Part shown: positions 32,479 to 61,965 of the stretch, piece after piece
Layout: every line of letters starts with the position of its first letter
Numbering within the stretch: position 1 is the stretch's first letter
Virus record (IMG/VR): IMGVR_UViG_3300023184_000024
Span: 62,001-126,000 of that record
Strand: one strand, 5' to 3'
DNA: 64,000 nt
Made by a program: the position numbers and the translations under genes
Notes under the pieces: generated by a model
Told to the model about the DNA's origin: nothing
The model's input: only the letters and a program-made list of their open reading frames with translations
Database searches by the model: none

Positions 32479-33466
32479 TAAACAGGTAATAAAATTGACC
32501 AATAAAAAAACTATAGTAGTAACTGGATCTTCGGGATACATCGGTGGTGAGATTGCACTTAAACTTCATGACCTAGGTCACAAAGTTATCGGCATCGACC
32601 GAGTTGTTGCACCCGACAGACTCAAGCCAGCGTTTCCCAACTTTGTTAATTTAAATTTTGGAGATCGGCAAACATTAGAGTATATTGCTAGCTGGAAACC
32701 AGATGCAATTATACACTGTGCAGGAAGTAGTCTAGTTGGATCTAGTGTGCGTGACCCATCTGAGTACTACAGTAACAATGTAGCACAAAGCATCAAACTT
32801 ATAGATATGATCAAAGAGCAGTTGCCAAACACCAGGATCATTTTTAGTTCTAGCGCATCTGTTTACGGAGTCCCATATTTAAATCCGTGCCACGAAGTTG
32901 ATCCCTGTGATCCGATCAGTCCCTACGGAGAAAGCAAACGTATGTTTGAGCAAATGCTTGGCAGTTATCACAAAGCATACGGGTTGGATTATGTATCATT
33001 TAGATTTTTTAATGCTTGTGGTGCCGACAGTCAAGGGAGACATGGTCAAAATCCTGGAGCAACACATATTATTAGTCGAGTGTTAGAAAGTATCTACCAC
33101 GATCAAGAGTTTACTCTCAACGGCGACCAATTCCCCACCGATGATGGCACATGCATCCGAGATTATGTGCATGTCGAAGATATTGCAAATGCTCACATAT
33201 CTGCACTAAATTTAGATATTCCGCCAGGAGTTTATAATTTAGGATCTGGAGTTGGCACAAGTAATAAACAAATTATCACTGCGGCAGAGAGAATCACAGG
33301 AAAAAAATTAAAACTAATCATAGGCCCAACTCGTGATGGTGATCCGGCAATGTTAACCGCAGACTCGGCCAAATTTGAAAGACTAGTTGGACCTTGGAGA
33401 ACATTTGACCTTGATGATATGATTACTCACGCATGGAATTGGCAACACACTAGGGAAAATGTATGA
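32456..33466 (+). CDS. galE: UDP-glucose 4-epimerase (start possibly TTG ~32495)
   Basis: TGSSGYIG, FSSSASVYG, YGESK, FRFFNACGA, CIRDYVHVED, YNLGSG. Confidence 0.9.
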   Translation: MIFHILNNKQVIKLTNKKTIVVTGSSGYIGGEIALKLHDLGHKVIGIDRVVAPDRLKPAFPNFVNLNFGDRQTLEYIASWKPDAIIHCAGSSLVGSSVRDPSEYYSNNVAQSIKLIDMIKEQLPNTRIIFSSSASVYGVPYLNPCHEVDPCDPISPYGESKRMFEQMLGSYHKAYGLDYVSFRFFNACGADSQGRHGQNPGATHIISRVLESIYHDQEFTLNGDQFPTDDGTCIRDYVHVEDIANAHISALNLDIPPGVYNLGSGVGTSNKQIITAAERITGKKLKLIIGPTRDGDPAMLTADSAKFERLVGPWRTFDLDDMITHAWNWQHTRENV

Positions 33467-34383
33467 CCGCAGTACCTACAATGAAAAATTTAAAAAAATT
33501 ACCTTACGGTGGTGCAAGTTATGTCAACGACCCCGAAATGCTTAAGTATGTCAATGATTTGCTGGCGCAAGGAGATGCCACTGAGTACTTGCAAGATTTA
33601 AACATACATCAAAAATTTGTAGAAAATTATCGTGCATGGATCAATTTATCTCGCCACAATAAATTTAAAAATCTAAATCAGTTTCCAATTAGTACTATTA
33701 GCCTTGGTACTTCAGAAAGTTTTGATAAGTTTTATCTAAAAAATTCTACTCGACGATTCAGATGCTTCAAAGGCGAATACATGTACCATGCTGCCAGCTG
33801 GAGAAACTATTTTCCAGGATGGTGCTATCTCGAAGAAGATTCTATTCAGGCAAATGATGCCTTGGTGATCAGCATGCCGTTTAGTGACACCGGTGATATA
33901 CATCCGGACATGGAAGGTGTATTAAGTATTTGCGATCGTCTAGGCGTTCCGGTACTAATTGACTGTGCATTTTTTGGTATTTGTAGAGACATAGAATTTG
34001 ACTTTGATCGTCCATGTATCACTGACATTGTGTTTAGTCTGAGTAAAACCTTTCCAGTCAGTCATGTTAGAATTGGTATGAGACTATCACGCAATGACGA
34101 TGATGACAGCCTGTTAGTACATCATAAAACCAATTACGTTAATCGTTTAGGCGCTTGGCTGGGAATCAAATTAATAGATCAGTATGGTCCAGATTGGAAT
34201 GTCAACAAATGGAGACCGGCACAAGAATTGTTTTGTCAACACTTGTCGGTTACCCCAAGCAAAACGGTGATATTTGGACTAGGAAAAAGTCATTGGTCGC
34301 AGTATAATAGAGGAACAAGTACAAATCGTTTGTGCTTTGCCAACTACTTAAGCAACGGATTATTGCCCAATGATAGATATTGA
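33463..34383 (+). CDS. Short PLP-dependent (fold type I) enzyme-like protein
   Basis: LIDCAFFG and FSLSKTF..SHVRIG motifs; paralog of 20250. Confidence 0.65.
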   Translation: MTAVPTMKNLKKLPYGGASYVNDPEMLKYVNDLLAQGDATEYLQDLNIHQKFVENYRAWINLSRHNKFKNLNQFPISTISLGTSESFDKFYLKNSTRRFRCFKGEYMYHAASWRNYFPGWCYLEEDSIQANDALVISMPFSDTGDIHPDMEGVLSICDRLGVPVLIDCAFFGICRDIEFDFDRPCITDIVFSLSKTFPVSHVRIGMRLSRNDDDDSLLVHHKTNYVNRLGAWLGIKLIDQYGPDWNVNKWRPAQELFCQHLSVTPSKTVIFGLGKSHWSQYNRGTSTNRLCFANYLSNGLLPNDRY

Positions 34384-35101
34384 GTTACTGACCAGTAAGT
34401 ATGATCCCAAAGATTATTCTATAGACTATGCTCACGGTCAACCAGTTCCTTGGATTGTATTTGATGACTTTTTACCCGAAGACATTTTACTTGCAGTCCA
34501 AGAAGAAATAGAATTAATCCCGAAACACATGTGGAGCAAATTTACACGCAACGGCAGTTTTATGTTAGAGTGTAATAATCTTAAGTATGCACCCAGGATA
34601 CGAGACTTGGTATTAAATTTTAACAGTGGAGAATTCATTCATTGGTTAGAAGCAATCACTGGGACTACAAAAGTGATACCAGACCCGCACTTGATTGGTG
34701 CTGGGTTAATGAGGTGTGGTGCAGGACACAATTTAAAACTTCACACCGACTTTAACTGGAATGAACAACTCCATCTCAATAGAAAACTCAGCATGATTTT
34801 ATACGTCAGCAAAGAATGGGAAACTGAATGGGGTGGGTCTTTGGAATTTTGGGATTTTGAAAAAACTCAGTGTCTACATCGAGTTGACCCCAAACCCAAT
34901 CGGCTGTTGATCTGGGATTATGATGAGCGTCTTATACACGGTCATCCTTTGCCCATCGACTGTCCAGATGATGCCAGCAGAGATGGGCTTAGATTATTCT
35001 ACTTCGGTAGTAACGCAACGCCGTTGAATGCGCCGCATCGTAGTCTTTATTGGTTCGATGATCAAAACAATAAATCGTATGATCGTAGAGAAAATCAATA
35101 A
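34370..35101 (+). CDS. 2OG-Fe(II) oxygenase (prolyl-4-hydroxylase-like)
   Basis: LKLHTDFN (HxD), WGGSLEFW, IHGH, R..LRLFY. Confidence 0.85.
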   Translation: MIDIELLTSKYDPKDYSIDYAHGQPVPWIVFDDFLPEDILLAVQEEIELIPKHMWSKFTRNGSFMLECNNLKYAPRIRDLVLNFNSGEFIHWLEAITGTTKVIPDPHLIGAGLMRCGAGHNLKLHTDFNWNEQLHLNRKLSMILYVSKEWETEWGGSLEFWDFEKTQCLHRVDPKPNRLLIWDYDERLIHGHPLPIDCPDDASRDGLRLFYFGSNATPLNAPHRSLYWFDDQNNKSYDRRENQ

Positions 35102-35106
35102 ATATC

Positions 35107-35128
35107 TTTGTCACACAAAGGTGACAAA
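35107..35128. promoter_or_regulatory. Perfect inverted repeat TTTGTCAC-N6-GTGACAAA upstream of folE
   Basis: 8-bp perfect palindrome between a late-promoter-like ATAAATA (35098) and the folE RBS. Confidence 0.45.
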
Positions 35129-35166
35129 CTTTTCAATTATTAATCCGTGTAAGGAAGGAAAACAAA

Positions 35167-35847
35167 ATGAGTTATAACAAAACTAAATGCGACCCCGAGT
35201 TGGGTCAACGTGTACATCAACATTTACTCAAATGTGGAGTCGAGACTCCAACATTTCAACACAGTGTTGATCGCAAAGACAAAATTGATCTAATAGAGCG
35301 TGACTTCAAACACATCATGGAAGTGTTGGGGTTAGATCTCAGTGACGATAGCCTCATGGACACTCCCAAACGTGTGGCCAAGATGTATGTCAATGAAATC
35401 TTTTGGGGGCTAGACTACGAAGCATTTCCCAAATGTACCACAGTAGACAACAAAATGAAGTACGATGAAATGGTGGTCGAGCGCAATGTCAACGTGCAAA
35501 GTAACTGCGAGCACCACTTTGTTGTCATCGATGGGGTGGCCACTGTGGGTTACATTCCCAAACAAAAAGTACTTGGCTTGTCCAAGATTAATCGTGTTGT
35601 TGAATACTTTAGCAAACGCCCTCAAATTCAAGAACGCTTGACCGAGCAAGTGTACTATGCTCTACAATATATTTTGGAAACAGACGACATTGCAGTTGTT
35701 GTAGATGCGCAACACTACTGTGTCAAGAGTCGTGGTGTTGAGGATGTGGGTAGCTCAACGGTTACCAGCAAGCTTGGTGGAGTATTTAAAAATGATCCAT
35801 CGGTGCGTGTAGAGTTTATGAACATTGTCAACAATTGTAATCGATAA
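35167..35847 (+). CDS. folE: GTP cyclohydrolase I
   Basis: TPKRVAK, SNCEHHF, GLSKINR, RPQIQERLT, HYCVKSRG. Confidence 0.96.
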   Translation: MSYNKTKCDPELGQRVHQHLLKCGVETPTFQHSVDRKDKIDLIERDFKHIMEVLGLDLSDDSLMDTPKRVAKMYVNEIFWGLDYEAFPKCTTVDNKMKYDEMVVERNVNVQSNCEHHFVVIDGVATVGYIPKQKVLGLSKINRVVEYFSKRPQIQERLTEQVYYALQYILETDDIAVVVDAQHYCVKSRGVEDVGSSTVTSKLGGVFKNDPSVRVEFMNIVNNCNR

Positions 35848-36479
35848 TGAATTATCAGGTATTACACGACCAAGGCAAGATTATGTGTTACATTGGCAAT
35901 ACTTTGCCAAACCAGATGTACCACAATCATTACTCTAAGCACCGTCCTAGTGAATTACTGAGATTTGAGGAAGTCTTAGAAAAAGACTCTCAGTGGTTCC
36001 GGGCACGGCAGTTTATGGTAGCCAACACAGATGTGTCATTCAGAAAGCAAGTGGTTGAAGGTCTTGCTAAATTTTCACCTCACTATTTTTCTTTGGTATC
36101 TAACAATACCACTGTTGGTGTTGACACAAAAATCGGGCATAACGTAGTAATCAATGACTTTAATTTTTTATGGGACAACGTGGTCATTGGTGACCATTGC
36201 ACAATCACAACCCACTGTACTATTAGCCATGGCACAGTGATTGGAAACTTTTGTTTTATTGCTCCTTACTCTTATATTTGTTTCACTACACTAGGGCAAG
36301 GGGTGATTGTTGGACTGCGTAGCTCGTTTATTGCCAAGCCTGAAGCTCTAGTACATGTAGCAGACTGGACAAACTTTGTCATGGATAGTCGAGTAAATAT
36401 GCCAATTGTAAAATCCGGCACTTATCGAGGCCACAAGTTGATTGCACAAGAAACTAGTTTAGATAAAAAAATACTATGA
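35847..36479 (+). CDS. Hexapeptide-repeat (LbH) acetyltransferase, PglD/NeuD-like
   Basis: Repeated [IV]GxxxxI hexapeptides (IGHNVVI, IGDHCTI, IGNFCFI, LGQGVIV). Confidence 0.75.
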   Translation: MNYQVLHDQGKIMCYIGNTLPNQMYHNHYSKHRPSELLRFEEVLEKDSQWFRARQFMVANTDVSFRKQVVEGLAKFSPHYFSLVSNNTTVGVDTKIGHNVVINDFNFLWDNVVIGDHCTITTHCTISHGTVIGNFCFIAPYSYICFTTLGQGVIVGLRSSFIAKPEALVHVADWTNFVMDSRVNMPIVKSGTYRGHKLIAQETSLDKKIL

Positions 36480-37714
36480 ACACATCTCAAAAACACATAT
36501 ATGCATCATGCGTACTAGGAAGTCTAATTGCCTGGTATGATTTTATCATTTTTGGAACTGCCACCGCATTGGTATTTTCGCAGTTGTTCTTTCCTGGCAT
36601 GGGGTATATCATTCCCATGTTGGTGTTTGCTGTAGGTTTTCTTAGCAGGCCTTTGGGAAGTTTTATCATAGGACATATCGGTGACAAGATTGGCCGCCGC
36701 AAAACATTGTTGGCAACGTTGTTGTTAACTGGTGCATCAAGTGTGTTAATTGGATTACTGCCAACTTATGCCGACATAGGTGTTACCGCCACAGTGCTTC
36801 TTGTTCTTTGCCGAATTCTGCAAACATTTGCGTTGGGCGGTGAATGGTCGGCTGCTAGTACAATGATGCTAGAGCACAATGTTGAAAAACCCAACAAGGG
36901 ATTTTTAGGTAGTACACTATCAAGCGGTCTGGCATTGGCATCGGCACTGTCAGCAGGGGCATGGGCATTGGCATCAGCTTGGGGCACTGAATTTTTAATG
37001 TCCTGGGGTTGGCGCATTCCGTTCTTGTTTAGCTTTGTGTTGGTTGGGCTTGGTGTGTACATGAGATACCGGGTTTTAGAAACTCCAGTTTTTGAATCAA
37101 CTCAGAAAGTAAAGAACCCAACCGCTAGCTTGCTAATCAATCATTGGCCAAAAGTATTACTGGGTGCGGCATCCACCCAAGTTGGTGCTGTATGGTGGTA
37201 TGGCATCACTGTGTTTGGATTTGCCTACATGGCTAACACACTCAAAATTGATCGGGCAGTAATTAATCAAACATGGTTTTATTTTACTCCGTTGTTGTTC
37301 TCAGCCCTGCTGTTCTTTGGATGGGTGGGTGATAAATTTTCAAGATTGTTGCTGTATAGAACCTGTGCAATACTTTCTATACTACTGGTCTATCCTATAT
37401 TTTTATTACTGGGCCAAGGAAATATTGTACTCCCGATATTTTTAGCAATTATTGTTATACAATCAATGTCGTTTGCATCTGACCCAACGTTTTTTACTGA
37501 ACTATTTCCAGCAGAACTCAGACAGGTTGGCAGCGGTGTTACAAAGAGCCTGTCAACTTTGCTGGCTGGAGGCATTGTACCATTGGTTGCACAACAATTA
37601 ATGGTTACCTACAATGACATCATGTATGTGGCTCACCTGTTTATTGCACTAAGCGTTGTACAAGTGCTGGCCACAGTGATGATAAAAAAGCATTATGAAC
37701 AACGTATCCAATAG
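36476..37714 (+). CDS. MFS transporter, metabolite:H+ symporter (ShiA/ProP-like)
   Basis: WYDFIIFG, RPLG..IIGHIGDKIGRRKTL, GLLPTYADIG, GGEW, WGWRIPF, ELFPAELRQVG; about 12 hydrophobic segments. Confidence 0.92.
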   Translation: MNTSQKHIYASCVLGSLIAWYDFIIFGTATALVFSQLFFPGMGYIIPMLVFAVGFLSRPLGSFIIGHIGDKIGRRKTLLATLLLTGASSVLIGLLPTYADIGVTATVLLVLCRILQTFALGGEWSAASTMMLEHNVEKPNKGFLGSTLSSGLALASALSAGAWALASAWGTEFLMSWGWRIPFLFSFVLVGLGVYMRYRVLETPVFESTQKVKNPTASLLINHWPKVLLGAASTQVGAVWWYGITVFGFAYMANTLKIDRAVINQTWFYFTPLLFSALLFFGWVGDKFSRLLLYRTCAILSILLVYPIFLLLGQGNIVLPIFLAIIVIQSMSFASDPTFFTELFPAELRQVGSGVTKSLSTLLAGGIVPLVAQQLMVTYNDIMYVAHLFIALSVVQVLATVMIKKHYEQRIQ

Positions 37715-39161
37715 TCTCACAGAAAAAAACAGATACAATGAAAAAACTGCTTACATTTGCGGCAACACTGAATTAACGTTTGCTGACGTTTACATTCGCA
37801 GTCGGGCTGCCGCAACTTACCTAGCTGAGCTGGGTGTAGTTTCCAGAGAAAAAGTTTTATTTGTAATGGAAGACTGCCTTGAATGGCCGTTGTTTTTCCA
37901 CGGGTGTGTTATGATAGGAGCAATACCAGTTGTGCTGAGTCCCAAGACTGACATTGACATGCTACAAAGAATTTGCGATGTCACTGGTGCAAAAAATATC
38001 ATAACAAACCACAACTTATCAACTTTGCTCGATAACCCAAACTTGGTCATCATTGAACCCAATGACAACTACAAATCATCCGATCCCTACACAAATTTCT
38101 ATGACTTCAGACCCACCGACGATGTTGTTTATTTCTCAACGTCAGGTACTACCGGATATCCAAAACTGGTAATGCATTGTCACCAGGTGGTCGAAAACTT
38201 TACCACTTCTGCATTTCCCTGGCACATAACTGACCATAGCATTGTTTGTTGTGGTGCAAAAATGTCATTTGGCTTTGGGTGGATTGTACAAGTTCTCGGT
38301 TGTCTTGTTTTTCAATCGACTCATATAATATTACCTTCTGATTTTGATTTAAGAAAAATTCCCAACAACATCAACGAACATTCTGCAACTCATTTGTTTA
38401 CAAACCCAACTGTGTTGCAAATGATGCTTAAGTTTGACCATGTGGTTTTAGGAAACCATTTAGAATATATATGGTGCGGTGGCGAGCCGTTGCCTCAGTC
38501 TGTGATACGAGCCTGCATAGAAAAGTTCAACAGGTACCCTGGCGACACCTACGGTCTCAGCGAGTCACCATGTAGCACTATTTTAAACGATCCAAACAAC
38601 TATCGCATAGGTTCAATTGGAAAACCAGCACTGGGAGTAGAATGTCGCATAGTAGATGATGAGTACAACGACTGCGAAATTAACACGCCCGGTAGACTAT
38701 TGATCAAGTCAAATTTATTGTCAACTGGCTACTACAATGACCAATTCAATACCGAAAAAACATTCCAGGACAACTGGTTACACACCAACGATGTTGTGTA
38801 CAAAGATCAAGATGAATATTTTTACTTTGTAGGAAGATTGGACCAATATGTTAAAATTCGTGGACGTTTTGTAAGTGCTCTAGAAATTGAAAACATACTG
38901 TTGGGATACTCAGACATACTTGAGGCCAGTGTCACTTTTGCCAAAAAAGGTGCCGATGACTTCATGGAAGCATTTGCTTTTGTGGTAATAGAAAACCCCA
39001 AGATAAGCATCACTGATATACGAGCAAGATTAACGTCTGAACGATACCCTAGTCATTTGATTCCTAGGAACATTTTTATAACAAATACCTTGCCAAAAAC
39101 GGTTACTAATAAAAAAATACGGGTGTTTTCAACACTGATGGATTGGAAAAATACCGGTTGA
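37695..39161 (+). CDS. ANL-superfamily acyl-adenylating enzyme (benzoate-CoA-ligase-like)
   Basis: FSTSGTTGYPK (A3), YGLSE (A5), HTND..YFYFVGRLD..KIRG (A7/A8), LPKTVTNKK (A10). Confidence 0.88.
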   Translation: MNNVSNSLTEKNRYNEKTAYICGNTELTFADVYIRSRAAATYLAELGVVSREKVLFVMEDCLEWPLFFHGCVMIGAIPVVLSPKTDIDMLQRICDVTGAKNIITNHNLSTLLDNPNLVIIEPNDNYKSSDPYTNFYDFRPTDDVVYFSTSGTTGYPKLVMHCHQVVENFTTSAFPWHITDHSIVCCGAKMSFGFGWIVQVLGCLVFQSTHIILPSDFDLRKIPNNINEHSATHLFTNPTVLQMMLKFDHVVLGNHLEYIWCGGEPLPQSVIRACIEKFNRYPGDTYGLSESPCSTILNDPNNYRIGSIGKPALGVECRIVDDEYNDCEINTPGRLLIKSNLLSTGYYNDQFNTEKTFQDNWLHTNDVVYKDQDEYFYFVGRLDQYVKIRGRFVSALEIENILLGYSDILEASVTFAKKGADDFMEAFAFVVIENPKISITDIRARLTSERYPSHLIPRNIFITNTLPKTVTNKKIRVFSTLMDWKNTG

Positions 39162-39186
39162 CACCAAATTCTATTACTGCTATACT
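39158..39186 (+). promoter_or_regulatory. sigma70-type promoter
   Basis: GGTTGACA-N17-TATACT upstream of the S8 protease gene. Confidence 0.75.
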
Positions 39187-39211
39187 AACAGTTCTTTAAT
39201 TAGGAGTCTAC

Positions 39212-41173
39212 ATGAAAGTAAAACCTTTAGCACTAGCCATTACACAGCTATTGTCCTATCCAGTATTTGCACAATCGTTTATGGGCACACCCACTCCGGT
39301 GTTTAGTACCAACCCAAATCAATGGTTAAACAGCACAACAATTAATAAAGCCAACGAAACAATCAAGGCAAACTATGCTTGGAGTCGCGGATGGACCGGC
39401 AAAGGCAGTACCATTCTAATCATGGACACCGGTATCGATGTCAACAATGTTGACTTTGCCGGCAAAATCAAATATCAACTTGATATCAGCAAAACTGGTA
39501 TCCAGGACACTGTCGGGCACGGTACTCACACTGCTGGAATTGCTGCCGCGGCCTTCAACAATGTTGGTATCACCGGCGTGGCCTTTGATGCCAATCTTGC
39601 CATTGCTAAATTAAGCAATACTTCCAATGTCACCAGCGGCCAAGCACTACAGGCCCTGAATTGGGCACGTCAATATTCGGATATAACTGTGGCCAACTTT
39701 AGTGCCAACACTGCATATTCGTCTGCATACACCAAAAGTGTGACACAGTTTGCACCAGGTGTTTATTCCAGTAGCGACAAAAACTACGGTGGCGTCAACT
39801 ATTATAATTTAGAGAAACCTGAATCTTGGGCGTCAGCACTGAGCCCAAACATGGTTCTCACCGTCAGTGCTGGTAACTCTGCAAATCCATATCCACAGAA
39901 TCCAGCTACATTTGCCGCGGCCACTGACCGGTCGGGAAAATTAGTGTTGAACGGCCAAATGATAATTGTGGGCAATTGGAATACACTAGCAGGACGGGTA
40001 GAAGGTGCACAGGCAGGACACGTCTGCAAAAACATTGTCGGTACAACTTGCAAAGACACATTCCGAACTTCCGACTTTTATATTTTAGCACCAGGCATGT
40101 CTGTAGTCAGCGATGCCATTGGCGGCGGAGTTAAAGCAATGAGCGGAACCAGTCAGGCCGCACCACAGGTTGCAGGAGCAGTGGCAGTTATTGGCCAAAT
40201 GTGGCCATACATGACTCCTGCCAATCAAGTTCAGTTGTTGCTAAAAACAGCCAACAAGAACTTGCCTAACTACAATGTCAATGTCATGGGACAAGGTTTA
40301 CTAGATCTCGAAGCCGCAACAAGGCCGGTTGGTCCATTGGGGATTTCAATGACTGGGCGTACTGGCGTTGTTGTTCCTATTTCCGGGGCAATTGCACTCA
40401 GCAATACCGGCACACAAACAGTGTCTAAATTAAGTTCAATTTCAGCAGTTGATTCGTTTCAAAGAGATTTCACTGTGAATTTATCACCAATGGTGGTAAA
40501 GAATTCGCTGATGGCTGATTCCATTACCATGGATGCAGACCCAGGATTCAGCTGGAGTGGACGGTGGACTGGATTGGTAGCTGGACAAAATCAGTCTGCG
40601 CCACTATCGGGCGTTCAATCTTCCAATGGCGACAGCACTGTCACCATCGACTCGAAAGCCTTTGACCCCAAAGCTGAAAGGTCGCATCAACTCACATTGA
40701 CCAACAGCAAATTCAATCCTTTTGTAAACTTTTCTGGAGCATGGGGACAAACAACTGGATCTACCACTTTAGAATACAGCATGTCACAACAGTTTGATTC
40801 TGGGTGGTGGGCACAAGTTGGTGCAATGCAAACATCAGTAAATCACACCGCAGGCTTGGTTAGTAGTGTAACTCCTGTTAGTGCGCTACATGCTGTGGGT
40901 GGCCGACAAATTGGAGATTTAAATGTGTTTGCTGGCATTAAGCCTACAGTGGTGCACGGCTATGTAAATATGCTGGCACCAACCAGTGTAGATGCCGATG
41001 GTGTTATGTCTTATACTCAAATTAAAAATAATCTAGCAGGCTCTGCAACTGTGGGCTATGCTGGATTTAAATGGACGCATAGTGTCAGTCGAGAAGGTAA
41101 GTTGACTTTCCGAGGACAGGTAGCACAAGACGGTAGTGCCAATGCCAAACTATATTACATACATCAACTATGA
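39212..41173 (+). CDS. Secreted subtilisin (S8) serine protease with beta-rich C-terminal domain (autotransporter-like)
   Basis: Signal peptide MKVKPLALA...VFA; triad IMDTGID, GHGTH, SGTSQAAP; VSAGN oxyanion residue. Confidence 0.9.
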   Translation: MKVKPLALAITQLLSYPVFAQSFMGTPTPVFSTNPNQWLNSTTINKANETIKANYAWSRGWTGKGSTILIMDTGIDVNNVDFAGKIKYQLDISKTGIQDTVGHGTHTAGIAAAAFNNVGITGVAFDANLAIAKLSNTSNVTSGQALQALNWARQYSDITVANFSANTAYSSAYTKSVTQFAPGVYSSSDKNYGGVNYYNLEKPESWASALSPNMVLTVSAGNSANPYPQNPATFAAATDRSGKLVLNGQMIIVGNWNTLAGRVEGAQAGHVCKNIVGTTCKDTFRTSDFYILAPGMSVVSDAIGGGVKAMSGTSQAAPQVAGAVAVIGQMWPYMTPANQVQLLLKTANKNLPNYNVNVMGQGLLDLEAATRPVGPLGISMTGRTGVVVPISGAIALSNTGTQTVSKLSSISAVDSFQRDFTVNLSPMVVKNSLMADSITMDADPGFSWSGRWTGLVAGQNQSAPLSGVQSSNGDSTVTIDSKAFDPKAERSHQLTLTNSKFNPFVNFSGAWGQTTGSTTLEYSMSQQFDSGWWAQVGAMQTSVNHTAGLVSSVTPVSALHAVGGRQIGDLNVFAGIKPTVVHGYVNMLAPTSVDADGVMSYTQIKNNLAGSATVGYAGFKWTHSVSREGKLTFRGQVAQDGSANAKLYYIHQL

Positions 41174-41580
41174 CCTACAACATAATCACAGATCTCGAAC
41201 AAGCACAAGAAAACAAAATTGCGCCATGGGATGATCTCAACGAGGATCTCACAGATTATCACGTAGCTGTATTCCGAGACCGATTTCCGGTTACCAATGG
41301 ACACTTGTTGTTCGTGCCTAAATACAATGTTCATGCCGTGATCATGGATTGTTTTGAAATGGCTCTTAAAAAAGGGCAGGACATGGTAGCACAAGGTGAA
41401 TGTGATGCGTTCAATGTTGGTATCAACATGGGCCAGGCTGCTGGTCAGACTGTGATGTATCCACATGTGCATTTAATTCCTAGACGGGTAGGCGATTGTG
41501 CAGATCCTGTAGGCGGTGTGCGTGGCGTAGTTTCTGGTCAAGCGAACTACAAAACCCACAGTTACCAGGAACCAAAATGA
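41170..41580 (+). CDS. HIT family hydrolase
   Basis: FPVTNGHLLFVP; GQTVMYPHVHLIPR histidine triad. Confidence 0.92.
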   Translation: MTYNIITDLEQAQENKIAPWDDLNEDLTDYHVAVFRDRFPVTNGHLLFVPKYNVHAVIMDCFEMALKKGQDMVAQGECDAFNVGINMGQAAGQTVMYPHVHLIPRRVGDCADPVGGVRGVVSGQANYKTHSYQEPK

Positions 41581-41693
41581 TTATAATAACAAACTATACC
41601 AGAGATATTCAACTGCCATATGAAGAAGGATTACTGGAATGGCTACAGCAACAGTATCCTGCTTCTAAATATCAGTTAGTCGAATTAGAATAA
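41577..41693 (+). CDS. 38-aa hypothetical protein
   Basis: ATGA overlap with the HIT stop; MIIITNYTRDIQLPY... Confidence 0.5.
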   Translation: MIIITNYTRDIQLPYEEGLLEWLQQQYPASKYQLVELE

Positions 41694-41703
41694 ATATTCT
41701 TTT

Positions 41704-41768
41704 AAGCGGTCTTTGGCTTCATCCCGCTTTACAAACTCTGCCAGCCTATGCTACAATTAACATAGGAG
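41704..41768 (+). ncRNA. Candidate riboswitch-like leader of queD (H-type pseudoknot plus SD-sequestering hairpin)
   Basis: AAGCGG(41704)/CCGCTT(41729); loop TGGC(41714)/GCCA(41743); CCTATG(41745)/CATAGG(41766) overlaps SD AGGAG. Confidence 0.5.
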
Positions 41769-41775
41769 AAACAGC

Positions 41776-42327
41776 ATGCAATCATCAACACAAGAATTAA
41801 TCAACCACATGGAAGATAACTTCTCAAACACTAGACCGGTAGTTTACAAATATACTAGTACCAAAGAGTATCACGACGCATTTCCATGTGCGTACAGACA
41901 ATGGAGGGCCGACAGTCATTGTAACTTGATACACGGTTATTCGTTTAGTATGAAATTTTACTTTGGCACCAACGACCTAGATGTTCGCAACTGGGCGGCC
42001 GACTATGGTGGTTTAAAAGAACTAAAAAAGACACTAGAAGATCAATTTGACCACACTCTAATTGTGGCACAAGATGATCCAGAGATGGCAACATACAACT
42101 TGTTGGTAGAGAAAAAAATGGCCAAGGTAGTTGTACTGCCTAAATTGGGATGTGAAGGCTTGAGTGACATGCTGTACAAGTATGTGAATGGTGTTTACAT
42201 TCCAGAGATGTGGGGACCAGGAGAGGCTGCTAGACTTTGGTGTTATCGTGTGGAAGTGCGCGAAACGCAAGCAAACATGGCTTTCCGTGAAGGTCACCGC
42301 GAGTGGAATGAAGACCTATTTGCATAA
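41776..42327 (+). CDS. queD: 6-carboxy-5,6,7,8-tetrahydropterin synthase
   Basis: SHCNLIHGYS (CxxxHG), LEDQFDHTLI, GCEGL, EVRETQAN. Confidence 0.88.
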   Translation: MQSSTQELINHMEDNFSNTRPVVYKYTSTKEYHDAFPCAYRQWRADSHCNLIHGYSFSMKFYFGTNDLDVRNWAADYGGLKELKKTLEDQFDHTLIVAQDDPEMATYNLLVEKKMAKVVVLPKLGCEGLSDMLYKYVNGVYIPEMWGPGEAARLWCYRVEVRETQANMAFREGHREWNEDLFA

Positions 42328-42354
42328 TACTTAATTTAATAAAGGAAACATAAC

Positions 42355-42873
42355 ATGAAAAATATACCCAACGTAACATTTGCCTTCCGCGAAGGCGACG
42401 AAACTCCCAAAGATGGCGGCTGCCCAATCGGAGGAGAATTTGTTTTTAAAACCACAGCAGATTTGTTTGCCAACAAACGTGTGGTAGTGTTCAGCTTGCC
42501 AGGTGCATTCACACCAACTTGCAGTACCTACCAATTGCCAGGATTTGAGCAACAGTATGCTGAGTTCAAAGCCAAAGGCATTGATGAAATTTACTGCATC
42601 AGTGTCAACGACGCATTTGTCATGAATGCTTGGGCACAAGCATTAAACATCAAAAATGTCAAAGTCATTCCTGACGGTGCGGCTGGATTTACATCAGGCA
42701 TGAACATGCTGGTTGATCTGAGTGCTATTGGATTTGCCTGGCGCAGTCGACGTTATGCGGCCATTATCAACAACGGTGTGGTGGAACACATGTTCGAGGA
42801 ACCAGCATCAAGTGACAACGACCCTGATCCATACGGCGTTTCCAGTCCTGAGAATGTGATGAAGCATCTGTAA
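42355..42873 (+). CDS. Peroxiredoxin (Prx5-like redoxin)
   Basis: SLPGAFTPTCS, SVNDAFVM, RSRRYA. Confidence 0.93.
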   Translation: MKNIPNVTFAFREGDETPKDGGCPIGGEFVFKTTADLFANKRVVVFSLPGAFTPTCSTYQLPGFEQQYAEFKAKGIDEIYCISVNDAFVMNAWAQALNIKNVKVIPDGAAGFTSGMNMLVDLSAIGFAWRSRRYAAIINNGVVEHMFEEPASSDNDPDPYGVSSPENVMKHL

Positions 42874-42881
42874 GAAAAATT

Positions 42882-43247
42882 ATGTTTAGTGTTTTAAAGT
42901 TTATATACATACTGTTTAAGGCTTTTAGAGACGGAATCAATCCCAATCTTAACAGTCTACGTTATGCGCCAACTTATGTAAAATATCTAACTAGCATTTT
43001 GTTGGCCTGTTTCTGGTGTTTGGCTTTTGGAATTTACATTGGTGAATTACTGACCATTGGTTATAACATGATTGGACACATTGCTCTCATCAGCATGGCC
43101 TTTGCCACAGGTATTGTCATGCAGGTGTTTAAACGCACATACGGCCCTAGACAGGGCTCAGTGGATTATTTACGTATGCCTGACAGAAGCAGCCGGTGCG
43201 ATGAACTTACAGATGAACAGCGCAGAGAATTGGCCACAAGAATATGA
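42882..43247 (+). CDS. Small membrane protein
   Basis: Two hydrophobic segments. Confidence 0.6.
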   Translation: MFSVLKFIYILFKAFRDGINPNLNSLRYAPTYVKYLTSILLACFWCLAFGIYIGELLTIGYNMIGHIALISMAFATGIVMQVFKRTYGPRQGSVDYLRMPDRSSRCDELTDEQRRELATRI

Positions 43248-43408
43248 ACGATTTAAAATTTACCACAGCCGGCGAATACATGACAGATGACAAGTGTGAC
43301 GGTACTTGCATCATAAATGCAGAAGATGAATGCTGGTGTGGTCGCAAGTGGGACGGAGAGAAAATGTGTGCATCAATGGCAGATGACAATGTGTACTACG
43401 GAGCATAA
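43244..43408 (+). CDS. 54-aa Cys-containing hypothetical protein (below ORF-track cutoff)
   Basis: MNDLKFTTAGEY...CDGTC...CWCG; fills the gap with ATGA overlap. Confidence 0.55.
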   Translation: MNDLKFTTAGEYMTDDKCDGTCIINAEDECWCGRKWDGEKMCASMADDNVYYGA

Positions 43409-43410
43409 TC

Positions 43411-44061
43411 ATGTTAGAAACAATTTGCGATACATTAGTTGAAGCATATAGACGCAACTGGATTACCAGTCGTGATGGCAATGTCTCAATTCGTCATCAC
43501 GACCGTGATCACTTTTACATCACGCCCAGTGGTGTGCGTAAACAGACAATGCAACCGGATCAGTTTAAGAAGATTGGGATTGAACAAGGCTACTATGACC
43601 AACCTCCTAGACCATACTATTCTTGGAAAGAATTGGCATATACAGACATTAGTGAGAAGCTAAAACCTAGTGGAGAAATACCACTACACTTTGGATTACA
43701 ACGAGAAATGGGTCAACATAGAGACGATGTTAGAGTTGTAGTTCATTTACACCCCACTTACTGCATTGCCGCAATGCATGCCGGTATTGATTTAAGCACT
43801 ATCAGCAAAGCGTTTCCAGAACTTAATCGTTATACCAAGGTAGCACCCAATGTGGGAGATGTGCCACCTATCAGCCAAGAGCTTGCGGATCAATGCCATA
43901 AAAATCTTGGATTAGATAATGCAGGTAACATTGAGTATGATATAGTAGGTATCAAAGGTCACGGTGTTGTTGCCATTGACACAAGCCCATGGCGTGCATT
44001 TGAACACATTGAACGATTAGAACATATTTGTCAAATCGTATTAGCATCAGGTAAATTTTAA
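43411..44061 (+). CDS. Class II aldolase/adducin family protein
   Basis: SRDGNVS, YITPSG, PSGEIPLH, VVHLHP, IKGHGVVA. Confidence 0.88.
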   Translation: MLETICDTLVEAYRRNWITSRDGNVSIRHHDRDHFYITPSGVRKQTMQPDQFKKIGIEQGYYDQPPRPYYSWKELAYTDISEKLKPSGEIPLHFGLQREMGQHRDDVRVVVHLHPTYCIAAMHAGIDLSTISKAFPELNRYTKVAPNVGDVPPISQELADQCHKNLGLDNAGNIEYDIVGIKGHGVVAIDTSPWRAFEHIERLEHICQIVLASGKF

Positions 44062-44071
44062 GGAGAAAATT

Positions 44072-44761
44072 ATGTTTGGAACAACTTATACCGGTGGAAT
44101 TGCATATCGTTCTGCCAGCGAAATCAACTCAGCAATGGGCCGTGTCTATGGACATATGAGTCTTGCTGTTATTGTATCAATGATTGTTAGTTACTTTGTA
44201 GGCACTAGCCCAGAGTTATTAGCATTCTTTTTTACTGGCATGCTAAAGTGGATTGTGATCTTTGCACCATTGGTAGCAATCTTTGGTATCACTATTTTGC
44301 TAAACGCAAGTCCAACTAAACAGATGGCACAGTTATGCTTACACGGCTTCGCGGCGCTGATGGGACTGAGTTTTGCCACAATATTTGCTGTGTTCACTAT
44401 GGGCAGTATTGTGTCAGCATTTATGGGTGCGGCAATACTGTTTAGTGTTATGAGTGGCTATGGGTACTTTACCAAACAGAGCCTAGATAGTGTTGGTAAG
44501 TTTATGTTTGTGGGATTGATTGCTATCATCATTGCCAGCATTGTCAATATCTTTATTGGTAGCACAGTTATGCAAATGGTAATCAGTGCGTTGGCAATCA
44601 TCATCTTTCTTGGATTGACTGCATATGATACTCAAAAGATTCGAGAAGAAGTCAGCTTAGATACCAGCGATGTTGTGGAGATTCGCGGAGCACTAACACT
44701 TTACATGGATTTTATCAACCTGTTTATCAATCTCTTAAATCTGTTTGGTGATAGAAAATAA
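44072..44761 (+). CDS. Bax inhibitor-1/YccA family membrane protein
   Basis: Seven hydrophobic segments; GLTAYDTQKI and ALTLYMDFINLF. Confidence 0.9.
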   Translation: MFGTTYTGGIAYRSASEINSAMGRVYGHMSLAVIVSMIVSYFVGTSPELLAFFFTGMLKWIVIFAPLVAIFGITILLNASPTKQMAQLCLHGFAALMGLSFATIFAVFTMGSIVSAFMGAAILFSVMSGYGYFTKQSLDSVGKFMFVGLIAIIIASIVNIFIGSTVMQMVISALAIIIFLGLTAYDTQKIREEVSLDTSDVVEIRGALTLYMDFINLFINLLNLFGDRK

Positions 44762-44778
44762 TATATCACTGACAAAAT

Positions 44779-44970
44779 ATGAATAGTTTAGAAAAAATTT
44801 GGGCAAGAGCAACTGGTCATTTGATGGGGTCTTCGGATTCTGATAGACCAGACGTTCCTATTCTCACATTGAGAGAAGCCAGGATTGCACTGTTTTTAAA
44901 AACTTTCTGGGTCATACTACATGTAATAACATGTGGTTTTATCATAGCAAATGTGATACATAATTGGTAG
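44779..44970 (+). CDS. Small hypothetical membrane protein
   Basis: WARATGHLMG..D.D.PDVP pattern with a hydrophobic tail. Confidence 0.6.
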   Translation: MNSLEKIWARATGHLMGSSDSDRPDVPILTLREARIALFLKTFWVILHVITCGFIIANVIHNW

Positions 44971-44973
44971 AAG

Positions 44974-45783
44974 ATGACAAATACTAACATAACTTTATTA
45001 TTACCGACAAGAGGTCGGCCCGACGCACTGGATCGAAGCATTACTAGTTTACTTGACAATGCCGAGCACCCTGAGTCTATTCAATGGTTGTTGGCATTTG
45101 ACAACGATGACCGTGAGTCTTATCAACATTTCAAAGACAATGTTTTGAAAAAAATCAAAGATTCCGGCGGTACATACAGTTGCATGGAGTTTCCTCCACT
45201 GGGGTATGGTCGCTTGCACGAATATCTAAATGCACTTGCCAAACACGGCACCGGAGATTGGTTTGTGTTTTGGAATGATGATGCAGTCATGATAGACAAA
45301 GGTTGGGACACTGTTATTACCAGCCATACTGGGACATTTTGTGTGCAAGCATTTAATACACACAACATGCATCCTTACAGTATATTTCCTATTATTCCAA
45401 AAGAATGGTATGCGTTGTTGGGGCATCTTAGCCAACACTCGCTCAACGATGCTTGGATCAGTCAGATTGCTTGGATGTTAGATATCATGGTAAGAATTCC
45501 TGTCAAAGTAGAACATGACAGATTTGATCTCACAGGAAAGAACGAAGACGCTACTTATAAAAATAGAGAAGTGTTTGAAGGCAACCCCCGTGATCCTAGA
45601 GATTTTAATCATGTGTTGAATCGAAAAAAACGATATGATGAAGGTCAAATCATTGCAACCTATCTTGAATCCAAAGGGTTAGACATGACCCACTGGCACC
45701 AAATAAAGTCAGGAAAAAAAGATCCTTGGAGTAAAATGTTGGCCAGTGATGTCAACCATCAGATGGTAAGAGTTGAGCCTTAG
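44974..45783 (+). CDS. GT-A (family 2-like) glycosyltransferase
   Basis: LLLPTRGRP; FWNDDAVM DxD; FPIIPKEW; DAWISQ. Confidence 0.7.
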   Translation: MTNTNITLLLPTRGRPDALDRSITSLLDNAEHPESIQWLLAFDNDDRESYQHFKDNVLKKIKDSGGTYSCMEFPPLGYGRLHEYLNALAKHGTGDWFVFWNDDAVMIDKGWDTVITSHTGTFCVQAFNTHNMHPYSIFPIIPKEWYALLGHLSQHSLNDAWISQIAWMLDIMVRIPVKVEHDRFDLTGKNEDATYKNREVFEGNPRDPRDFNHVLNRKKRYDEGQIIATYLESKGLDMTHWHQIKSGKKDPWSKMLASDVNHQMVRVEP

Positions 45784-45794
45784 AAACACACGCA

Positions 45795-46541
45795 ATGATT
45801 GCAACAAACGAAGCGCAAGAGATACAGTTTCCGCAAAACGATAAAATATTAGATCAAGTAATTGATTCAATTCGGCATGAGAGAAAAGAGCACTTACAAG
45901 ATCCATATTATCTTGAATATAAACTACTTCCTAAACTAGGGTTAAGTGATCGATTGATACAACATTATCCAGATCATCTACATCAATATTGTGGGACAGG
46001 AGTTGATAGTTTGCAGTATCCCAATCAATTTTCAAAATATCTTGCACACTTGGCAACTAAAAAAATCAAGTCCTACGCAGAAATAGGTTGTTATAAAGGT
46101 GGTGCATTTATCATTGCTTGCGAATATCTAAGTAGATTTCACGAATTAGAAATGTGCATTGCCTGTGATCCGTGGCCCAGATACATCATGATGCAGTACG
46201 CCGAACGCAGGCCCAACGTGGTCTACATCACAGACAGCAGTCATAACCCAAAATTTAAAGATCTATACCTGTCTAGAAAATGGGATATGACGTTTATAGA
46301 TGGTAACCAATCCTATCAAAGTGTTGTGCAGGACTACAACATGGTGAGTTCTAATACAAAAATGTTTGCTGTAAATAATATAAAAAATGTATTTTATCCC
46401 GGACCTCAACAATGTTGGGATGAGATTAAAACCTTGCATAAAAAAGATCAACTCATTGAATGGACTGATCAATACGACGATGTGCTGTTGCGCATGCGTG
46501 GGTCAGTCATGGGAATTGGATTTGTAGAGCATTCTGGTTAA
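45795..46541 (+). CDS. Methyltransferase-like protein
   Basis: YAEIGCYKGG, ACDPWP, FIDGNQSY..V..DY. Confidence 0.65.
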   Translation: MIATNEAQEIQFPQNDKILDQVIDSIRHERKEHLQDPYYLEYKLLPKLGLSDRLIQHYPDHLHQYCGTGVDSLQYPNQFSKYLAHLATKKIKSYAEIGCYKGGAFIIACEYLSRFHELEMCIACDPWPRYIMMQYAERRPNVVYITDSSHNPKFKDLYLSRKWDMTFIDGNQSYQSVVQDYNMVSSNTKMFAVNNIKNVFYPGPQQCWDEIKTLHKKDQLIEWTDQYDDVLLRMRGSVMGIGFVEHSG

Positions 46542-58462: not shown

Positions 58463-58481
58463 AATATATTGAAAGACTAAA

Positions 58482-59499: not shown

Positions 59500-59519
59500 T
59501 TGACGTGTAAATACTTTGA

Positions 59520-61327: not shown

Positions 61328-61337
61328 AGAGACTATA

Positions 61338-61513: not shown

Positions 61514-61521
61514 AGGACAAC

Positions 61522-61963: not shown

Positions 61964-61965
61964 GG

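What the first reader, a model, noticed from the sequence alone, without database searches (positions are those of the whole stretch)
41690..41778. Riboswitch-like pseudoknot and SD-sequestering hairpin in the queD leader
Seen: after ATAAATA come stem AAGCGG/CCGCUU with a 14-nt loop, loop UGGC pairing with downstream GCCA (H-type pseudoknot with an A-rich linker), then CCUAUG/CAUAGG hiding the AGGAG SD 7 nt before the queD ATG. Known: preQ1 riboswitches are small H-type pseudoknots controlling que genes, but this sequence does not match the preQ1-I consensus I know. Inference: a possibly new phage riboswitch class sensing a deazapurine, pterin or GTP-derived ligand to feedback-control DNA-modification precursor synthesis.
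Basis: partly seen in the sequence, partly recalled or inferred. Interest (0 to 1): 0.75.

Follow-up and report, generated by a model that had tools for sequence, protein, structure and literature searches.

The report
New phage pseudoknot riboswitch candidate
The 82-base leader before a phage QueD-like pterin-synthase gene is one copy of a widespread, undescribed RNA pseudoknot that looks like a preQ1-I riboswitch core rewired to switch translation on, although its ligand is still unknown.

Summary
The structure is real and conserved. The same leader precedes QueD/PTPS-like genes on hundreds of freshwater and marine viral contigs. Across 66 distinct copies, 97.7% of cells in P1 and pseudoknot helix P2 pair, and 7 of 12 pairs show compensatory changes. 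Eight unpaired bases never vary.

Its pseudoknot partner is 3 nt off: the covarying pairing is GGCU+CA (41715-41721) with UG+AGCC (41739-41746).

The P2 3' strand is also complementary to the SD (window type) or to the start codon region (other types). All three segments covary. Pseudoknot formation should therefore expose the ribosome site, which predicts a translational ON switch.

Promoter-like motifs sit just upstream of P1. Here that motif is ATAAATA.

No Rfam 15 family matches, and the PreQ1 model (RF00522) misses the element. Even so, it shares the GG/CC top of P1, an invariant C beside P1 and an A-rich L3 with preQ1-I. My model also weakly finds genuine preQ1-I elements.

The phage has FolE but no QueC or TGT, so feedback control of DNA modification is not supported. 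The ligand is untested. Verdict: a well-supported new riboswitch-like class, or a strongly divergent preQ1-I relative.

The parts
41690..41696 (+). ATAAATA, a T4-late-type promoter-like motif. It overlaps the stop codon of the upstream 38-aa ORF. The inferred transcription start is about 41702-41704, just before P1.
   Evidence: In the own genome ATAAATA occurs 38 times. 33 sites lie within 100 nt upstream of a gene in the same direction and 23 lie in the 7.5% that is non-coding; control heptamers give 11-21%. 31 of 68 related leaders have TAAATA 3-20 nt before P1, and 16 of 68 have instead a sigma70-like site (at least 10 of 12 matches) ending 6-11 nt before P1. Promoter function is inferred.
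41704..41709 (+). P1 5' strand (A)AGCGG
   Evidence: It pairs with 41724-41729. P1 pairs in 99.4% of cells, with types GC/CG, CG/AU/UA and AU/UA. The two top G-C pairs never vary.
41710..41714 (+). L1, UCUUU. N-C-U directly after P1 is conserved; the length varies from 4 to 10 nt across the family.
   Evidence: Alignments A1 and A2 and the marine leaders.
41715..41721 (+). P2 5' strand GGCU-U-CA (pseudoknot). U41719 is the invariant U of a conserved U x C mismatch.
   Evidence: Pair types are GC/AU/GU; AU/UA/GU/CG/GC; UA/CG/AU; and AU/GC. Indels are compensated on both strands.
41722..41723 (+). L2. C41723 is invariant (66 of 66) and sits directly 5' of the P1 3' strand, the position of the specificity cytosine in preQ1-I.
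   Evidence: The role of this position in preQ1-I is taken from PMC10622847.
41724..41729 (+). P1 3' strand CCGCU(U)
41730..41738 (+). L3, UACAAACUC. It is A-rich, with three invariant A and an invariant UC before P2.
   Evidence: columns 34, 37, 39, 41 and 42 are 66 of 66.
41739..41746 (+). P2 3' strand UG-CC-AGCC. This is the switching segment. C41745 and C41746 are shared with the SD hairpin, and U41739 and G41740 are shared with an outer CUG/CAG helix.
41745..41766 (+). P3 hairpin, CCUAUG (41745-50) with CAUAGG (41761-66). It sequesters the first bases of the SD. Together with CUG 41738-40 pairing with CAG 41772-74 it encloses the whole ribosome site.
   Evidence: MFE fold. The hairpin is conserved in all type-1 leaders.
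41749..41757 (+). TGCTACAAT, an extended -10-like element in the P3 loop, with TTTACA (41728-33) 18 nt upstream. It is a possible internal promoter that would bypass the aptamer.
   Evidence: 10 of 12 matches plus TG. By eye, TA...T is kept in nearly all type-1 leaders printed (no count was made), but the element is absent from types 2 and 3 and from marine leaders. The scan as a whole is not above chance (16 sites against 13.7 expected).
41764..41768 (+). Shine-Dalgarno AGGAG, 7 nt before the start codon.
41776..42327 (+). QueD-like/PTPS-family gene (183 aa; active-site motif CxxxHGY rather than CxxxHGH). This is the regulated gene.
   Evidence: Pfam PF01242 E = 5e-15. PHROG 2389, QueD-like, E = 1e-34. 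It falls below the NCBIfam QueD cut-off. The best PDB relative is a 6-carboxytetrahydropterin synthase, E = 3e-4.
35167..35847 (+). FolE (GTP cyclohydrolase I), the enzyme that makes the substrate of QueD/PTPS. This is context, not part of the RNA.
   Evidence: PF01227 E = 1e-61. FolE is present in 4 of 5 large relatives, and in one it lies directly upstream of the leader.

Best explanation
The 41704-41746 segment is the aptamer of a cis-acting RNA switch that begins at or near the 5' end of the mRNA. It folds as an H-type pseudoknot. P1 has 5-6 bp. A long P2 has 7-8 positions and a conserved U x C mismatch. L2 has 2 nt and ends in an invariant C next to P1. The A-rich L3 is placed to lie in the P1 minor groove.

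The P2 3' strand has two mutually exclusive partners. One is the aptamer loop, which gives the pseudoknot. The other is the ribosome site: the SD in the window's type, and the start codon plus the next 3-5 bases in the other types. In the default state the ribosome site is locked in a hairpin. Stabilising the pseudoknot pulls the P2 3' strand away and opens the ribosome site, so translation of the QueD-like gene goes ON.

The stabiliser is most likely a small guanine-faced heterocycle read by the invariant C. Candidates are a 7-deazaguanine such as preQ1 or preQ0, or a pterin or GTP-derived intermediate such as the FolE product.

Shown: the two helices, the invariant loops, the three-way covariation, the exclusive gene association and the promoter-like motifs. 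Inferred: the transcription start, the direction of switching, and that a small molecule is the trigger. Unknown: the ligand.
For: The family is large and specific. More than 595 freshwater and 295 marine viral contigs encode the protein. The leader was found before it in all 78 of the 80 fetched freshwater loci that keep upstream sequence (the 79th, L045, carries only a weak copy that lacks its P1 5' strand) and in 71 of 80 marine loci. In a protein-blind pattern scan, all 79 true instances precede a PTPS-like gene; in one of them (L313) a small cupin ORF lies between. There is one copy per genome in the own genome and in 5 large relatives.

Covariation, 66 distinct sequences: 97.7% of cells pair, 7 of 12 pairs have double changes (99 cells), and the score is 0.317 against 0.098 +/- 0.010 for shuffles (0 of 500 reach it). 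Sliding the partners drops pairing to 33-49%. A MAFFT-only subset gives 96.8%.

The proteins are only 39% identical between clades, yet 8 unpaired bases are invariant.

Three-way covariation: GACUU / AAGUC(AUC) / GAUGACUU in marine leaders, and GGCAU / AUGCC(AUC) / GAUGGCA in freshwater leaders. The mean complementary run is 7.07, against 5.19 +/- 0.11 with swapped partners.

Engaging the P2 3' strand costs the platform 3.5-9 kcal/mol in 13 of the 14 leaders tested and leaves the marine platform with no structure at all. Accessibility of the SD or AUG rises.

Promoter-like motifs lie directly upstream of P1.

Resemblance to preQ1-I: genuine preQ1-I elements are the top hits of my model in their loci, and alignment A7 shows the shared core.
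Against: No ligand binding has been shown or can be computed here. The single-sequence fold is not better than shuffles. Alignment A6 was fitted to a model that contains P2, so it leans towards that helix. For the window's own type the direction is less clear: with P2 engaged the SD opens (0.25 to 0.82) but a weak alternative UAUGCU/AGCAUG pairing could cover the AUG (0.77 to 0.10). ON control of a biosynthetic gene by a pathway product would be unusual. 9 of 80 marine genes and the nearest cultured-phage homologues do without any leader. One outlier (L070) has a poor P2.
Confidence: 0.6

Rival explanations
1. It is a true but highly divergent preQ1-I riboswitch (effectively a fourth type) that binds preQ1 or preQ0 in the canonical pocket. 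It differs only in a longer P2 and a rewired platform.
For: It shares the invariant GG/CC top of P1, the invariant C 5' of the P1 3' strand, a CAUC-CC...-AUAAAAA core and an H-type topology (PMC10622847). Model R1 ranks the two genuine Oceanobacillus preQ1-I elements first in their loci, at 10.5 and 3.3 bits. The regulated gene belongs to the QueD family, and in L021 a canonical QueD (CxxxHGH) sits directly under the leader.
Against: RF00522 (gathering score 39 bits) gives nothing at the locus even at E <= 10 in the genome, nor in 64-81-nt windows where noise of 7-13 bits is listed. L1 (N-C-U), the UC before P2, the U x C mismatch and the 2-nt L2 differ from preQ1-I. The predicted logic is ON, whereas the preQ1-I riboswitches described in PMC10622847 repress by sequestering the SD. 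The phages lack QueC and TGT.
Confidence: 0.3
2. It is a protein-binding translational operator. The pseudoknot is recognised by the QueD-like enzyme itself or by a phage translational regulator, as the 5' pseudoknot of the T4 gene 32 leader is recognised by gp32. No small molecule is involved.
For: The exclusive association with one gene family in unrelated neighbourhoods fits autoregulation. Invariant loop bases could equally be protein contacts. Phage leaders with operator pseudoknots are known from T4 gene 32 (from my own knowledge).
Against: A repressor would be expected to bind the OFF form, yet the conserved tertiary-looking features are in the ON (pseudoknot) form. The core resembles a known metabolite pocket. 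The protein diverges to 39% identity while the RNA core stays invariant.
Confidence: 0.12
3. It is a ligand-independent device. The ribosome-site hairpin silences some transcripts while others escape, by co-transcriptional folding of the pseudoknot in transcripts that start at the proximal promoter, or, in type-1 leaders, by an internal promoter that starts inside P3. This would be analogous to transcript-specific translation of T4 lysozyme.
For: Promoter-like motifs lie immediately before P1. The window and other type-1 leaders carry TGnTAnnnT in the P3 loop. Marine leaders have no visible promoter of their own and follow an upstream ORF.
Against: This does not explain eight invariant unpaired bases, the conserved U x C mismatch or the preQ1-I-like core. 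The internal promoter is absent from three of the four leader types. The promoter scan is not above chance (16 sites against 13.7 expected).
Confidence: 0.1
4. There is no RNA function. The hairpin is the terminator of the upstream gene, and the conserved bases are a DNA promoter for the QueD-like gene.
For: The TTTACA-18-TACAAT match and a GC-rich stem after a stop codon.
Against: The terminator scan does not list it: the loop has 14-20 nt and there is no U tract. Compensatory changes occur in two helices, one of them long-range. Strong promoters lie upstream of the stem, not downstream. The -10-like element is missing in most clades.
Confidence: 0.02

Closest known systems
preQ1-I riboswitch (Rfam RF00522; types I-III)
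   Same: H-type pseudoknot with a 5-6-bp P1 whose top two G-C pairs are conserved. A conserved cytosine sits at the 3' end of L2, next to the P1 3' strand. An A-rich L3 follows P1. It is located before a queuosine or 7-deazaguanine pathway gene. It controls translation.
   Different: The Rfam model does not detect it. P2 has 7-8 positions with an invariant U x C mismatch, against the much shorter P2 of preQ1-I (5 bp, CUUAG with CUAAG, in the Oceanobacillus example L235). L2 has only 2 nt. L1 is N-C-U... and L3 ends in an invariant UC. The P2 3' strand is an anti-ribosome-site segment rather than the SD itself, so the predicted logic is ON rather than OFF. It is known so far only from viral contigs.
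add adenine riboswitch of Vibrio vulnificus (translational ON purine riboswitch; from my own knowledge)
   Same: Ligand-stabilised aptamer folding removes a strand that otherwise sequesters the SD or start codon, which turns translation on.
   Different: It has a three-way-junction fold, not a pseudoknot, and there is no sequence relation.
SAM-II / SAM-V, other small H-type pseudoknot riboswitches (from my own knowledge)
   Same: Compact classical pseudoknot aptamers of about 45-55 nt that act on translation. SAM-V is likewise an aquatic-metagenome family.
   Different: No Rfam match. The conserved nucleotides and gene association differ. They are OFF switches with the SD inside the pseudoknot.
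Glutamine riboswitches (glnA RNA) carried by marine phages
   Same: A precedent for riboswitches encoded by aquatic T4-like phages (PMC9004378).
   Different: Different fold, ligand and genes. That family is shared with bacteria, whereas this one was found only on viral or probably viral contigs.
Phage T4 gene 32 leader pseudoknot (from my own knowledge)
   Same: An H-type pseudoknot at the 5' end of a phage mRNA that takes part in translational control.
   Different: It is a protein (gp32) nucleation site without a metabolite-like pocket or a competing anti-start helix.

Membership tests
preQ1-I riboswitch (RF00522) | Score at or above the Rfam gathering threshold (39 bits) with the family covariance model | tested here: not met
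   There is no hit at the locus at the gathering threshold, at E <= 10 in 401-, 64- and 81-nt windows, or in the whole genome with RF00522 alone. The same model scores 54.8 and 45.9 bits on genuine Oceanobacillus elements.
preQ1-I riboswitch (RF00522) | H-type pseudoknot with a 5-6-bp P1 and loop-to-3'-tail P2 | tested here: met
   Both helices covary. P2 is, however, 7-8 positions long and contains a conserved mismatch.
preQ1-I riboswitch (RF00522) | Conserved specificity cytosine at the 3' end of L2, adjacent to the P1 3' strand | tested here: met
   C41723 is invariant in 66 of 66 distinct sequences. The feature definition comes from PMC10622847. That this base contacts a ligand is not tested.
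preQ1-I riboswitch (RF00522) | A-rich L3 following P1 | tested here: met
   L3 reads U-A-N-A-A-A-Y-U-C, with three invariant A. It aligns with the AUAAAAA of genuine elements.
preQ1-I riboswitch (RF00522) | The SD lies in or next to the P2 3' strand, so the ligand turns translation OFF | tested here: not met
   The P2 3' strand is complementary to the SD or start codon, not part of it. The predicted logic is ON.
preQ1-I riboswitch (RF00522) | Binds preQ1 (or preQ0) | not testable with these tools
   This needs in-line probing, ITC or SPR. Complex prediction does not accept RNA plus ligand alone.
Riboswitch (generic) | Conserved aptamer with covarying helices and invariant unpaired nucleotides | tested here: met
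Riboswitch (generic) | Expression platform with mutually exclusive pairing that involves an aptamer strand | tested here: met
   Three-way covariation of the loop, the P2 3' strand and the ribosome site, plus energies. The switching itself is inferred.
Riboswitch (generic) | Lies in the 5' untranslated leader of the regulated mRNA | tested here: inconclusive
   Promoter-like motifs lie 3-20 nt before P1 in 42 of 68 leaders, and ATAAATA is enriched upstream of genes in this genome. No usable RNA-seq run was found.
Riboswitch (generic) | Direct, protein-free binding of a metabolite that changes expression | not testable with these tools
   This is an experiment.
Intrinsic terminator | GC-rich stem, 3-8-nt loop, U tract | tested here: not met
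   It is not listed by the scan, the loop has 14 nt, and no U run follows.

The most novel reading that the evidence does not exclude
This is a new riboswitch class known only from viruses. It would be a preQ1-I-derived pseudoknot that has been rewired into a translational ON switch and retuned to a different guanine-faced ligand, for example the FolE product dihydroneopterin triphosphate or another pterin or 7-deazapurine intermediate. Aquatic phages would then make the QueD-like enzyme only when its substrate or a host signal is present.
Probability: 0.4. Interest if true: 0.85.

Novelty: new variant of a known kind. Interest (0 to 1): 0.72.

Why it matters
Riboswitches are rare in phages, and the known phage examples are copies of bacterial classes. 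This one is abundant: hundreds of freshwater and marine viral contigs spanning at least five clades of the protein. It is absent from Rfam and was not found in any bona fide bacterial chromosome here.

If it binds a metabolite, it would show phages sensing host or self-made pterin or 7-deazapurine metabolism directly through RNA. It would also give a natural example of a preQ1-I-like pocket coupled to ON logic, and a compact 45-nt ON switch for synthetic biology.

It also points to the function of the widespread phage FolE plus QueD-like (CxxxHGY) gene pair, which here occurs without QueC or TGT and is not explained by DNA modification.

Tried and rejected
- **Rfam scans.** I scanned the window, six related loci and three short windows. 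The results were only tRNAs and noise.
- **RF00522 on the whole genome** gave noise elsewhere and nothing at the locus.
- **Single-sequence folding** was not significant.
- **RNAalifold on the raw MAFFT alignment** found only the 4 core P1 pairs, because it cannot see pseudoknots and MAFFT misplaced the loop indels.
- **A leader peptide** is rejected: there is no start codon, and the substitutions are compensatory rather than codon-like.
- **A terminator** is rejected.
- **Pattern scan of bacterial genomes**: 43 matches, about the number I estimated for chance from the pattern's information content. The only true ones are on short MAG contigs that carry the same phage-type gene, so they are probably viral DNA that was binned with the bacteria.
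- **BLAST of the leader against cultured phages** gave only chance matches; the Xanthomonas phage XbC2 hit lies inside a CDS on the opposite strand.
- **The nearest cultured-phage homologues** (R5C, ACP17, X1) have no room for a leader.
- **RNA-seq evidence**: only DNA runs plus one metatranscriptome holding 4% of the words.
- **Literature searches** found no description of this motif. One search failed on syntax.
Full report
**What is at the locus.** Bases 41694-41775 are an 82-nt gap. Upstream is a 38-aa ORF (41577-41693) whose start overlaps the end of a HIT-family gene in the sequence ATGA. Downstream is a 183-aa gene at 41776-42327. That gene belongs to the PTPS/QueD family: Pfam PF01242 E = 5e-15 and PHROG 2389 "QueD-like" E = 1e-34. 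It scores below the NCBIfam QueD cut-off. The window lies in a complete viral genome of 352,754 bp with direct terminal repeats, from lake water.

Its z-score is only -0.25, and 79 of 200 shuffles fold as well. No Rfam 15 family matches at the gathering threshold anywhere in the window except tRNAs. Nothing relevant appears at E <= 10 around the locus. The finding therefore stands or falls on comparison with relatives.

**Relatives.**
- A search of IMG/VR with the protein gave more than 595 loci, of which I fetched 80.
- The upstream 130 nt showed a conserved leader with obvious compensatory changes.
- A covariance model of the aptamer (R1) found the element before the gene in all 78 fetched loci that keep upstream sequence. 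L045 has only a weak copy (29.1 bits) that lacks its P1 5' strand.
- The own genome and five large relatives each hold exactly one copy.
- A marine clade of the protein, only 39% identical, has 295 loci. 71 of the 80 fetched carry the leader. The nine without it have the gene overlapping the upstream ORF.
Of these, 79 were true instances, and every one is followed by a PTPS-like gene from at least five protein clades. In one case (L313) a small cupin ORF lies in between.
- Other arrangements seen: in L021 a canonical QueD (CxxxHGH) comes first and the PTPS-like gene second, in L047 an 85-aa ORF comes first, and in L001 a weaker second copy precedes an inserted methyltransferase-like gene.

**The structure.** The family folds as an H-type pseudoknot. 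In window coordinates:

| Element | Position | Sequence or pairing |
|---|---|---|
| P1 | 41704/5-41709 with 41724-41729 | (A)AGCGG with CCGCU(U) |
| L1 | 41710-41714 | UCUUU |
| P2, outer part | 41715-41718 with 41743-41746 | G41715-C41746, G41716-C41745, C41717-G41744, U41718-A41743 |
| P2, mismatch | U41719 against C41741/C41742 | conserved U x C |
| P2, inner part | 41720-41721 with 41739-41740 | C41720-G41740, A41721-U41739 |
| L2 | 41722-41723 | UC |
| L3 | 41730-41738 | UACAAACUC |

- On a MAFFT-only alignment of 24 sequences, 96.8% of cells pair and 5 pairs show double changes. Sliding the partners drops pairing to 29-51%.
- On a model-guided alignment of 66 distinct freshwater and marine sequences, 97.7% of cells pair. 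7 of 12 pairs show double changes (99 cells). The covariation score is 0.317 against 0.098 +/- 0.010 for shuffles, and 0 of 500 shuffles reach it. Slid controls give 33-49%. This alignment was fitted to P2 and so leans towards it. P1 was not in that model and still pairs in 99.4% of cells.
- An inserted or deleted base pair in P2 is compensated on both strands.
Relatives cannot form it.
- Eight unpaired positions never vary in 66 sequences: the U and the C of the P2 mismatch, the C of L2, and three A plus the final UC of L3.
- The encoded proteins have meanwhile diverged to 39% identity.

**The expression platform.** The P2 3' strand plus the next 3-4 bases is complementary to the ribosome site, and the partner changes together with P2.

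| Leader type | P2 5' strand (loop) | P2 3' strand (+ next bases) | Ribosome-site partner |
|---|---|---|---|
| Marine | GACUU | AAGUC(AUC) | GAUGACUU |
| Freshwater type 2 | GGCAU | AUGCC or AUGUC (AUC) | GAUGGCA |
| Freshwater type 3 | GGCAU or GACGC | UGUCAUUG(U) | (A)CAAUGGCA |
| Window (type 1) | GGCU | CCUAUG | CAUAGG of the SD |

- In the window type, CUG 41738-40 also pairs with CAG 41772-74.
- The mean complementary run is 7.07 nt. It is 5.19 +/- 0.11 when ribosome sites are swapped between sequences with different P2 strands, and 4.48 when the P2 segment is shuffled.
- The loop strand and the start region are thus near-copies of each other that compete for one partner.
- Blocking the P2 strands, as pseudoknot formation would, costs the platform 3.5-9 kcal/mol in 13 of 14 leaders tested; one atypical marine variant (L142) is unaffected. 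It leaves the marine platform completely unstructured. SD or AUG accessibility rises.
- The P2 duplex alone (-2.5 to -7.7 kcal/mol) is weaker than the platform hairpin (-6.7 to -13.8 kcal/mol). The default state should therefore be OFF, and whatever stabilises the pseudoknot should turn translation ON.
- For the window's own type the SD opens (0.25 to 0.82), but a weak UAUGCU/AGCAUG pairing could then cover the AUG. The direction is less certain there than in the other three types.

**Is the RNA made from the right place?**
- 16 of 68 leaders have a sigma70-like promoter with at least 10 of 12 matches, several of them perfect TTGACA-N16-TATAAT, ending 6-11 nt before P1.
- 31 of 68 have TAAATA 3-20 nt before P1.
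- In this genome ATAAATA is rare (38 sites, against about 100 for heptamers of similar composition). 33 sites lie within 100 nt upstream of a gene in the same direction, against 11-21% for control heptamers. This is the signature of a phage promoter resembling the T4 late TATAAATA (quoted as TATAAAT in PMC9004378).
- The ATAAATA at 41690-41696 therefore probably starts the mRNA at about 41702-41704.
- This is inference. No usable RNA run exists.
- Type-1 leaders, including the window, also carry TGnTAnnnT in the P3 loop (41749-41757) with TTTACA 18 nt upstream. This is a possible internal promoter that would bypass the switch. It is absent from the other types.

**Comparison with what is known.**
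- *What it shares with preQ1-I.* The fold, the invariant GG/CC top of P1, the invariant cytosine next to the P1 3' strand and the A-rich L3 are the hallmarks of preQ1-I riboswitches, as summarised in PMC10622847.
- *Reciprocal test.* I fetched two genuine preQ1-I elements from an Oceanobacillus genome with RF00522 (54.8 and 45.9 bits). My model R1, with filters off, ranks exactly these elements first in their loci, at 10.5 and 3.3 bits over model positions 1-32. Alignment A7 shows the shared CAUC-CC...-AUAAAAA core.
- *Where membership fails.* RF00522 does not detect any member. P2 is much longer and has a conserved mismatch, L2 has 2 nt, and L1 and the end of L3 differ. The P2 3' strand is an anti-ribosome-site segment rather than the SD, so the logic is inverted.
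- *Conclusion.* It works like a preQ1-I-type pseudoknot switch but cannot be filed as a member on present evidence.
- *Literature.* I found no description of it.

**Biological context.**
- The genome encodes FolE 6 kb upstream (window 35167-35847). It has no QueC and no TGT/DpdA.
- 4 of 5 large relatives also have FolE, in one case directly upstream of the leader. None has a convincing QueC.
- The protein carries CxxxHGY in place of the QueD CxxxHGH.
- Homologues at 53% identity or less in cultured phages often sit in queC/queE/folE clusters, but they lack the leader.
- An ON switch fits better with sensing the substrate (the FolE product or GTP) or a host 7-deazapurine or pterin signal. This is speculation until binding is measured.

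**Verdict.**
- The interpretation as a possibly new phage riboswitch is supported as far as sequence analysis can go. Three corrections apply: it is related to preQ1-I, it is predicted ON, and there is no DNA-modification link.
- I put the probabilities as follows:

| Reading | Probability |
|---|---|
| A conserved two-state cis-regulatory RNA | about 0.85-0.9 |
| A metabolite riboswitch | about 0.6 |
| The ligand is preQ1 or preQ0 | about 0.3 |
| A protein operator | about 0.12 |
| A ligand-independent device | about 0.1 |

Noticed in passing
own genome (G000), e.g. window 456-899 and 60099-60590; G000:C1:131097-131603, 214097-214585: The 352,754-bp phage genome has 16 matches to Radical_SAM (PF04055), 11 of them over the curated cut-off. 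That is an unusually large set for a virus.
   Followed up: no
window 58386-64000: A cluster of at least 10 tRNA genes on the + strand.
   Followed up: no
window 32456-46541: A long same-strand block of auxiliary metabolic genes. In order: NAD-dependent epimerase/dehydratase, aminotransferase-like, 2OG-Fe(II) oxygenase, FolE, hexapeptide acyltransferase, MFS transporter, AMP-binding enzyme, S8 subtilase, HIT, QueD-like, peroxiredoxin, class II aldolase, Bax1-I family membrane protein, methyltransferase.
   Followed up: partly
window 41776-42327; L021:2560-2985: The regulated protein has CxxxHGY where QueD has CxxxHGH, in both freshwater and marine clades. One relative (L021) carries a canonical 141-aa QueD (HGH) immediately before it under the same leader. 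The two paralogues are therefore probably not redundant.
   Followed up: partly
L001:1935-1981: A second, weaker copy of the leader (33 bits; P1 ACCAG/CUGGU; UCUGC changed to UUCGC). It precedes a 309-aa SAM-methyltransferase-like gene inserted between the HIT and QueD-like genes. It is either a decaying duplicate or a variant switch.
   Followed up: partly
window 41728-41757: TTTACA-18-TACAAT with a TG extension lies inside the leader, with the -10 element in the P3 loop. By eye, TA...T is kept in nearly all type-1 leaders, so an internal promoter that bypasses the aptamer is possible.
   Followed up: partly
window 41577-41693: A 38-aa ORF, overlapping the HIT gene in ATGA, has no Pfam or PHROG match. 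It is absent from relatives, where the HIT gene ends directly before the leader.
   Followed up: no
own genome, both strands: ATAAATA is about threefold under-represented relative to heptamers of similar composition, and 87% of its 38 sites lie within 100 nt upstream of genes. It is therefore probably this phage's late-type promoter motif.
   Followed up: partly
L112, L098, L130, L108, L126 (MAG contigs): Short contigs binned into Bacteroidetes, Nitrospira and 'Rickettsiales MED657' MAGs carry the phage-type leader plus gene. They are probably viral DNA binned with bacterial genomes.
   Followed up: partly
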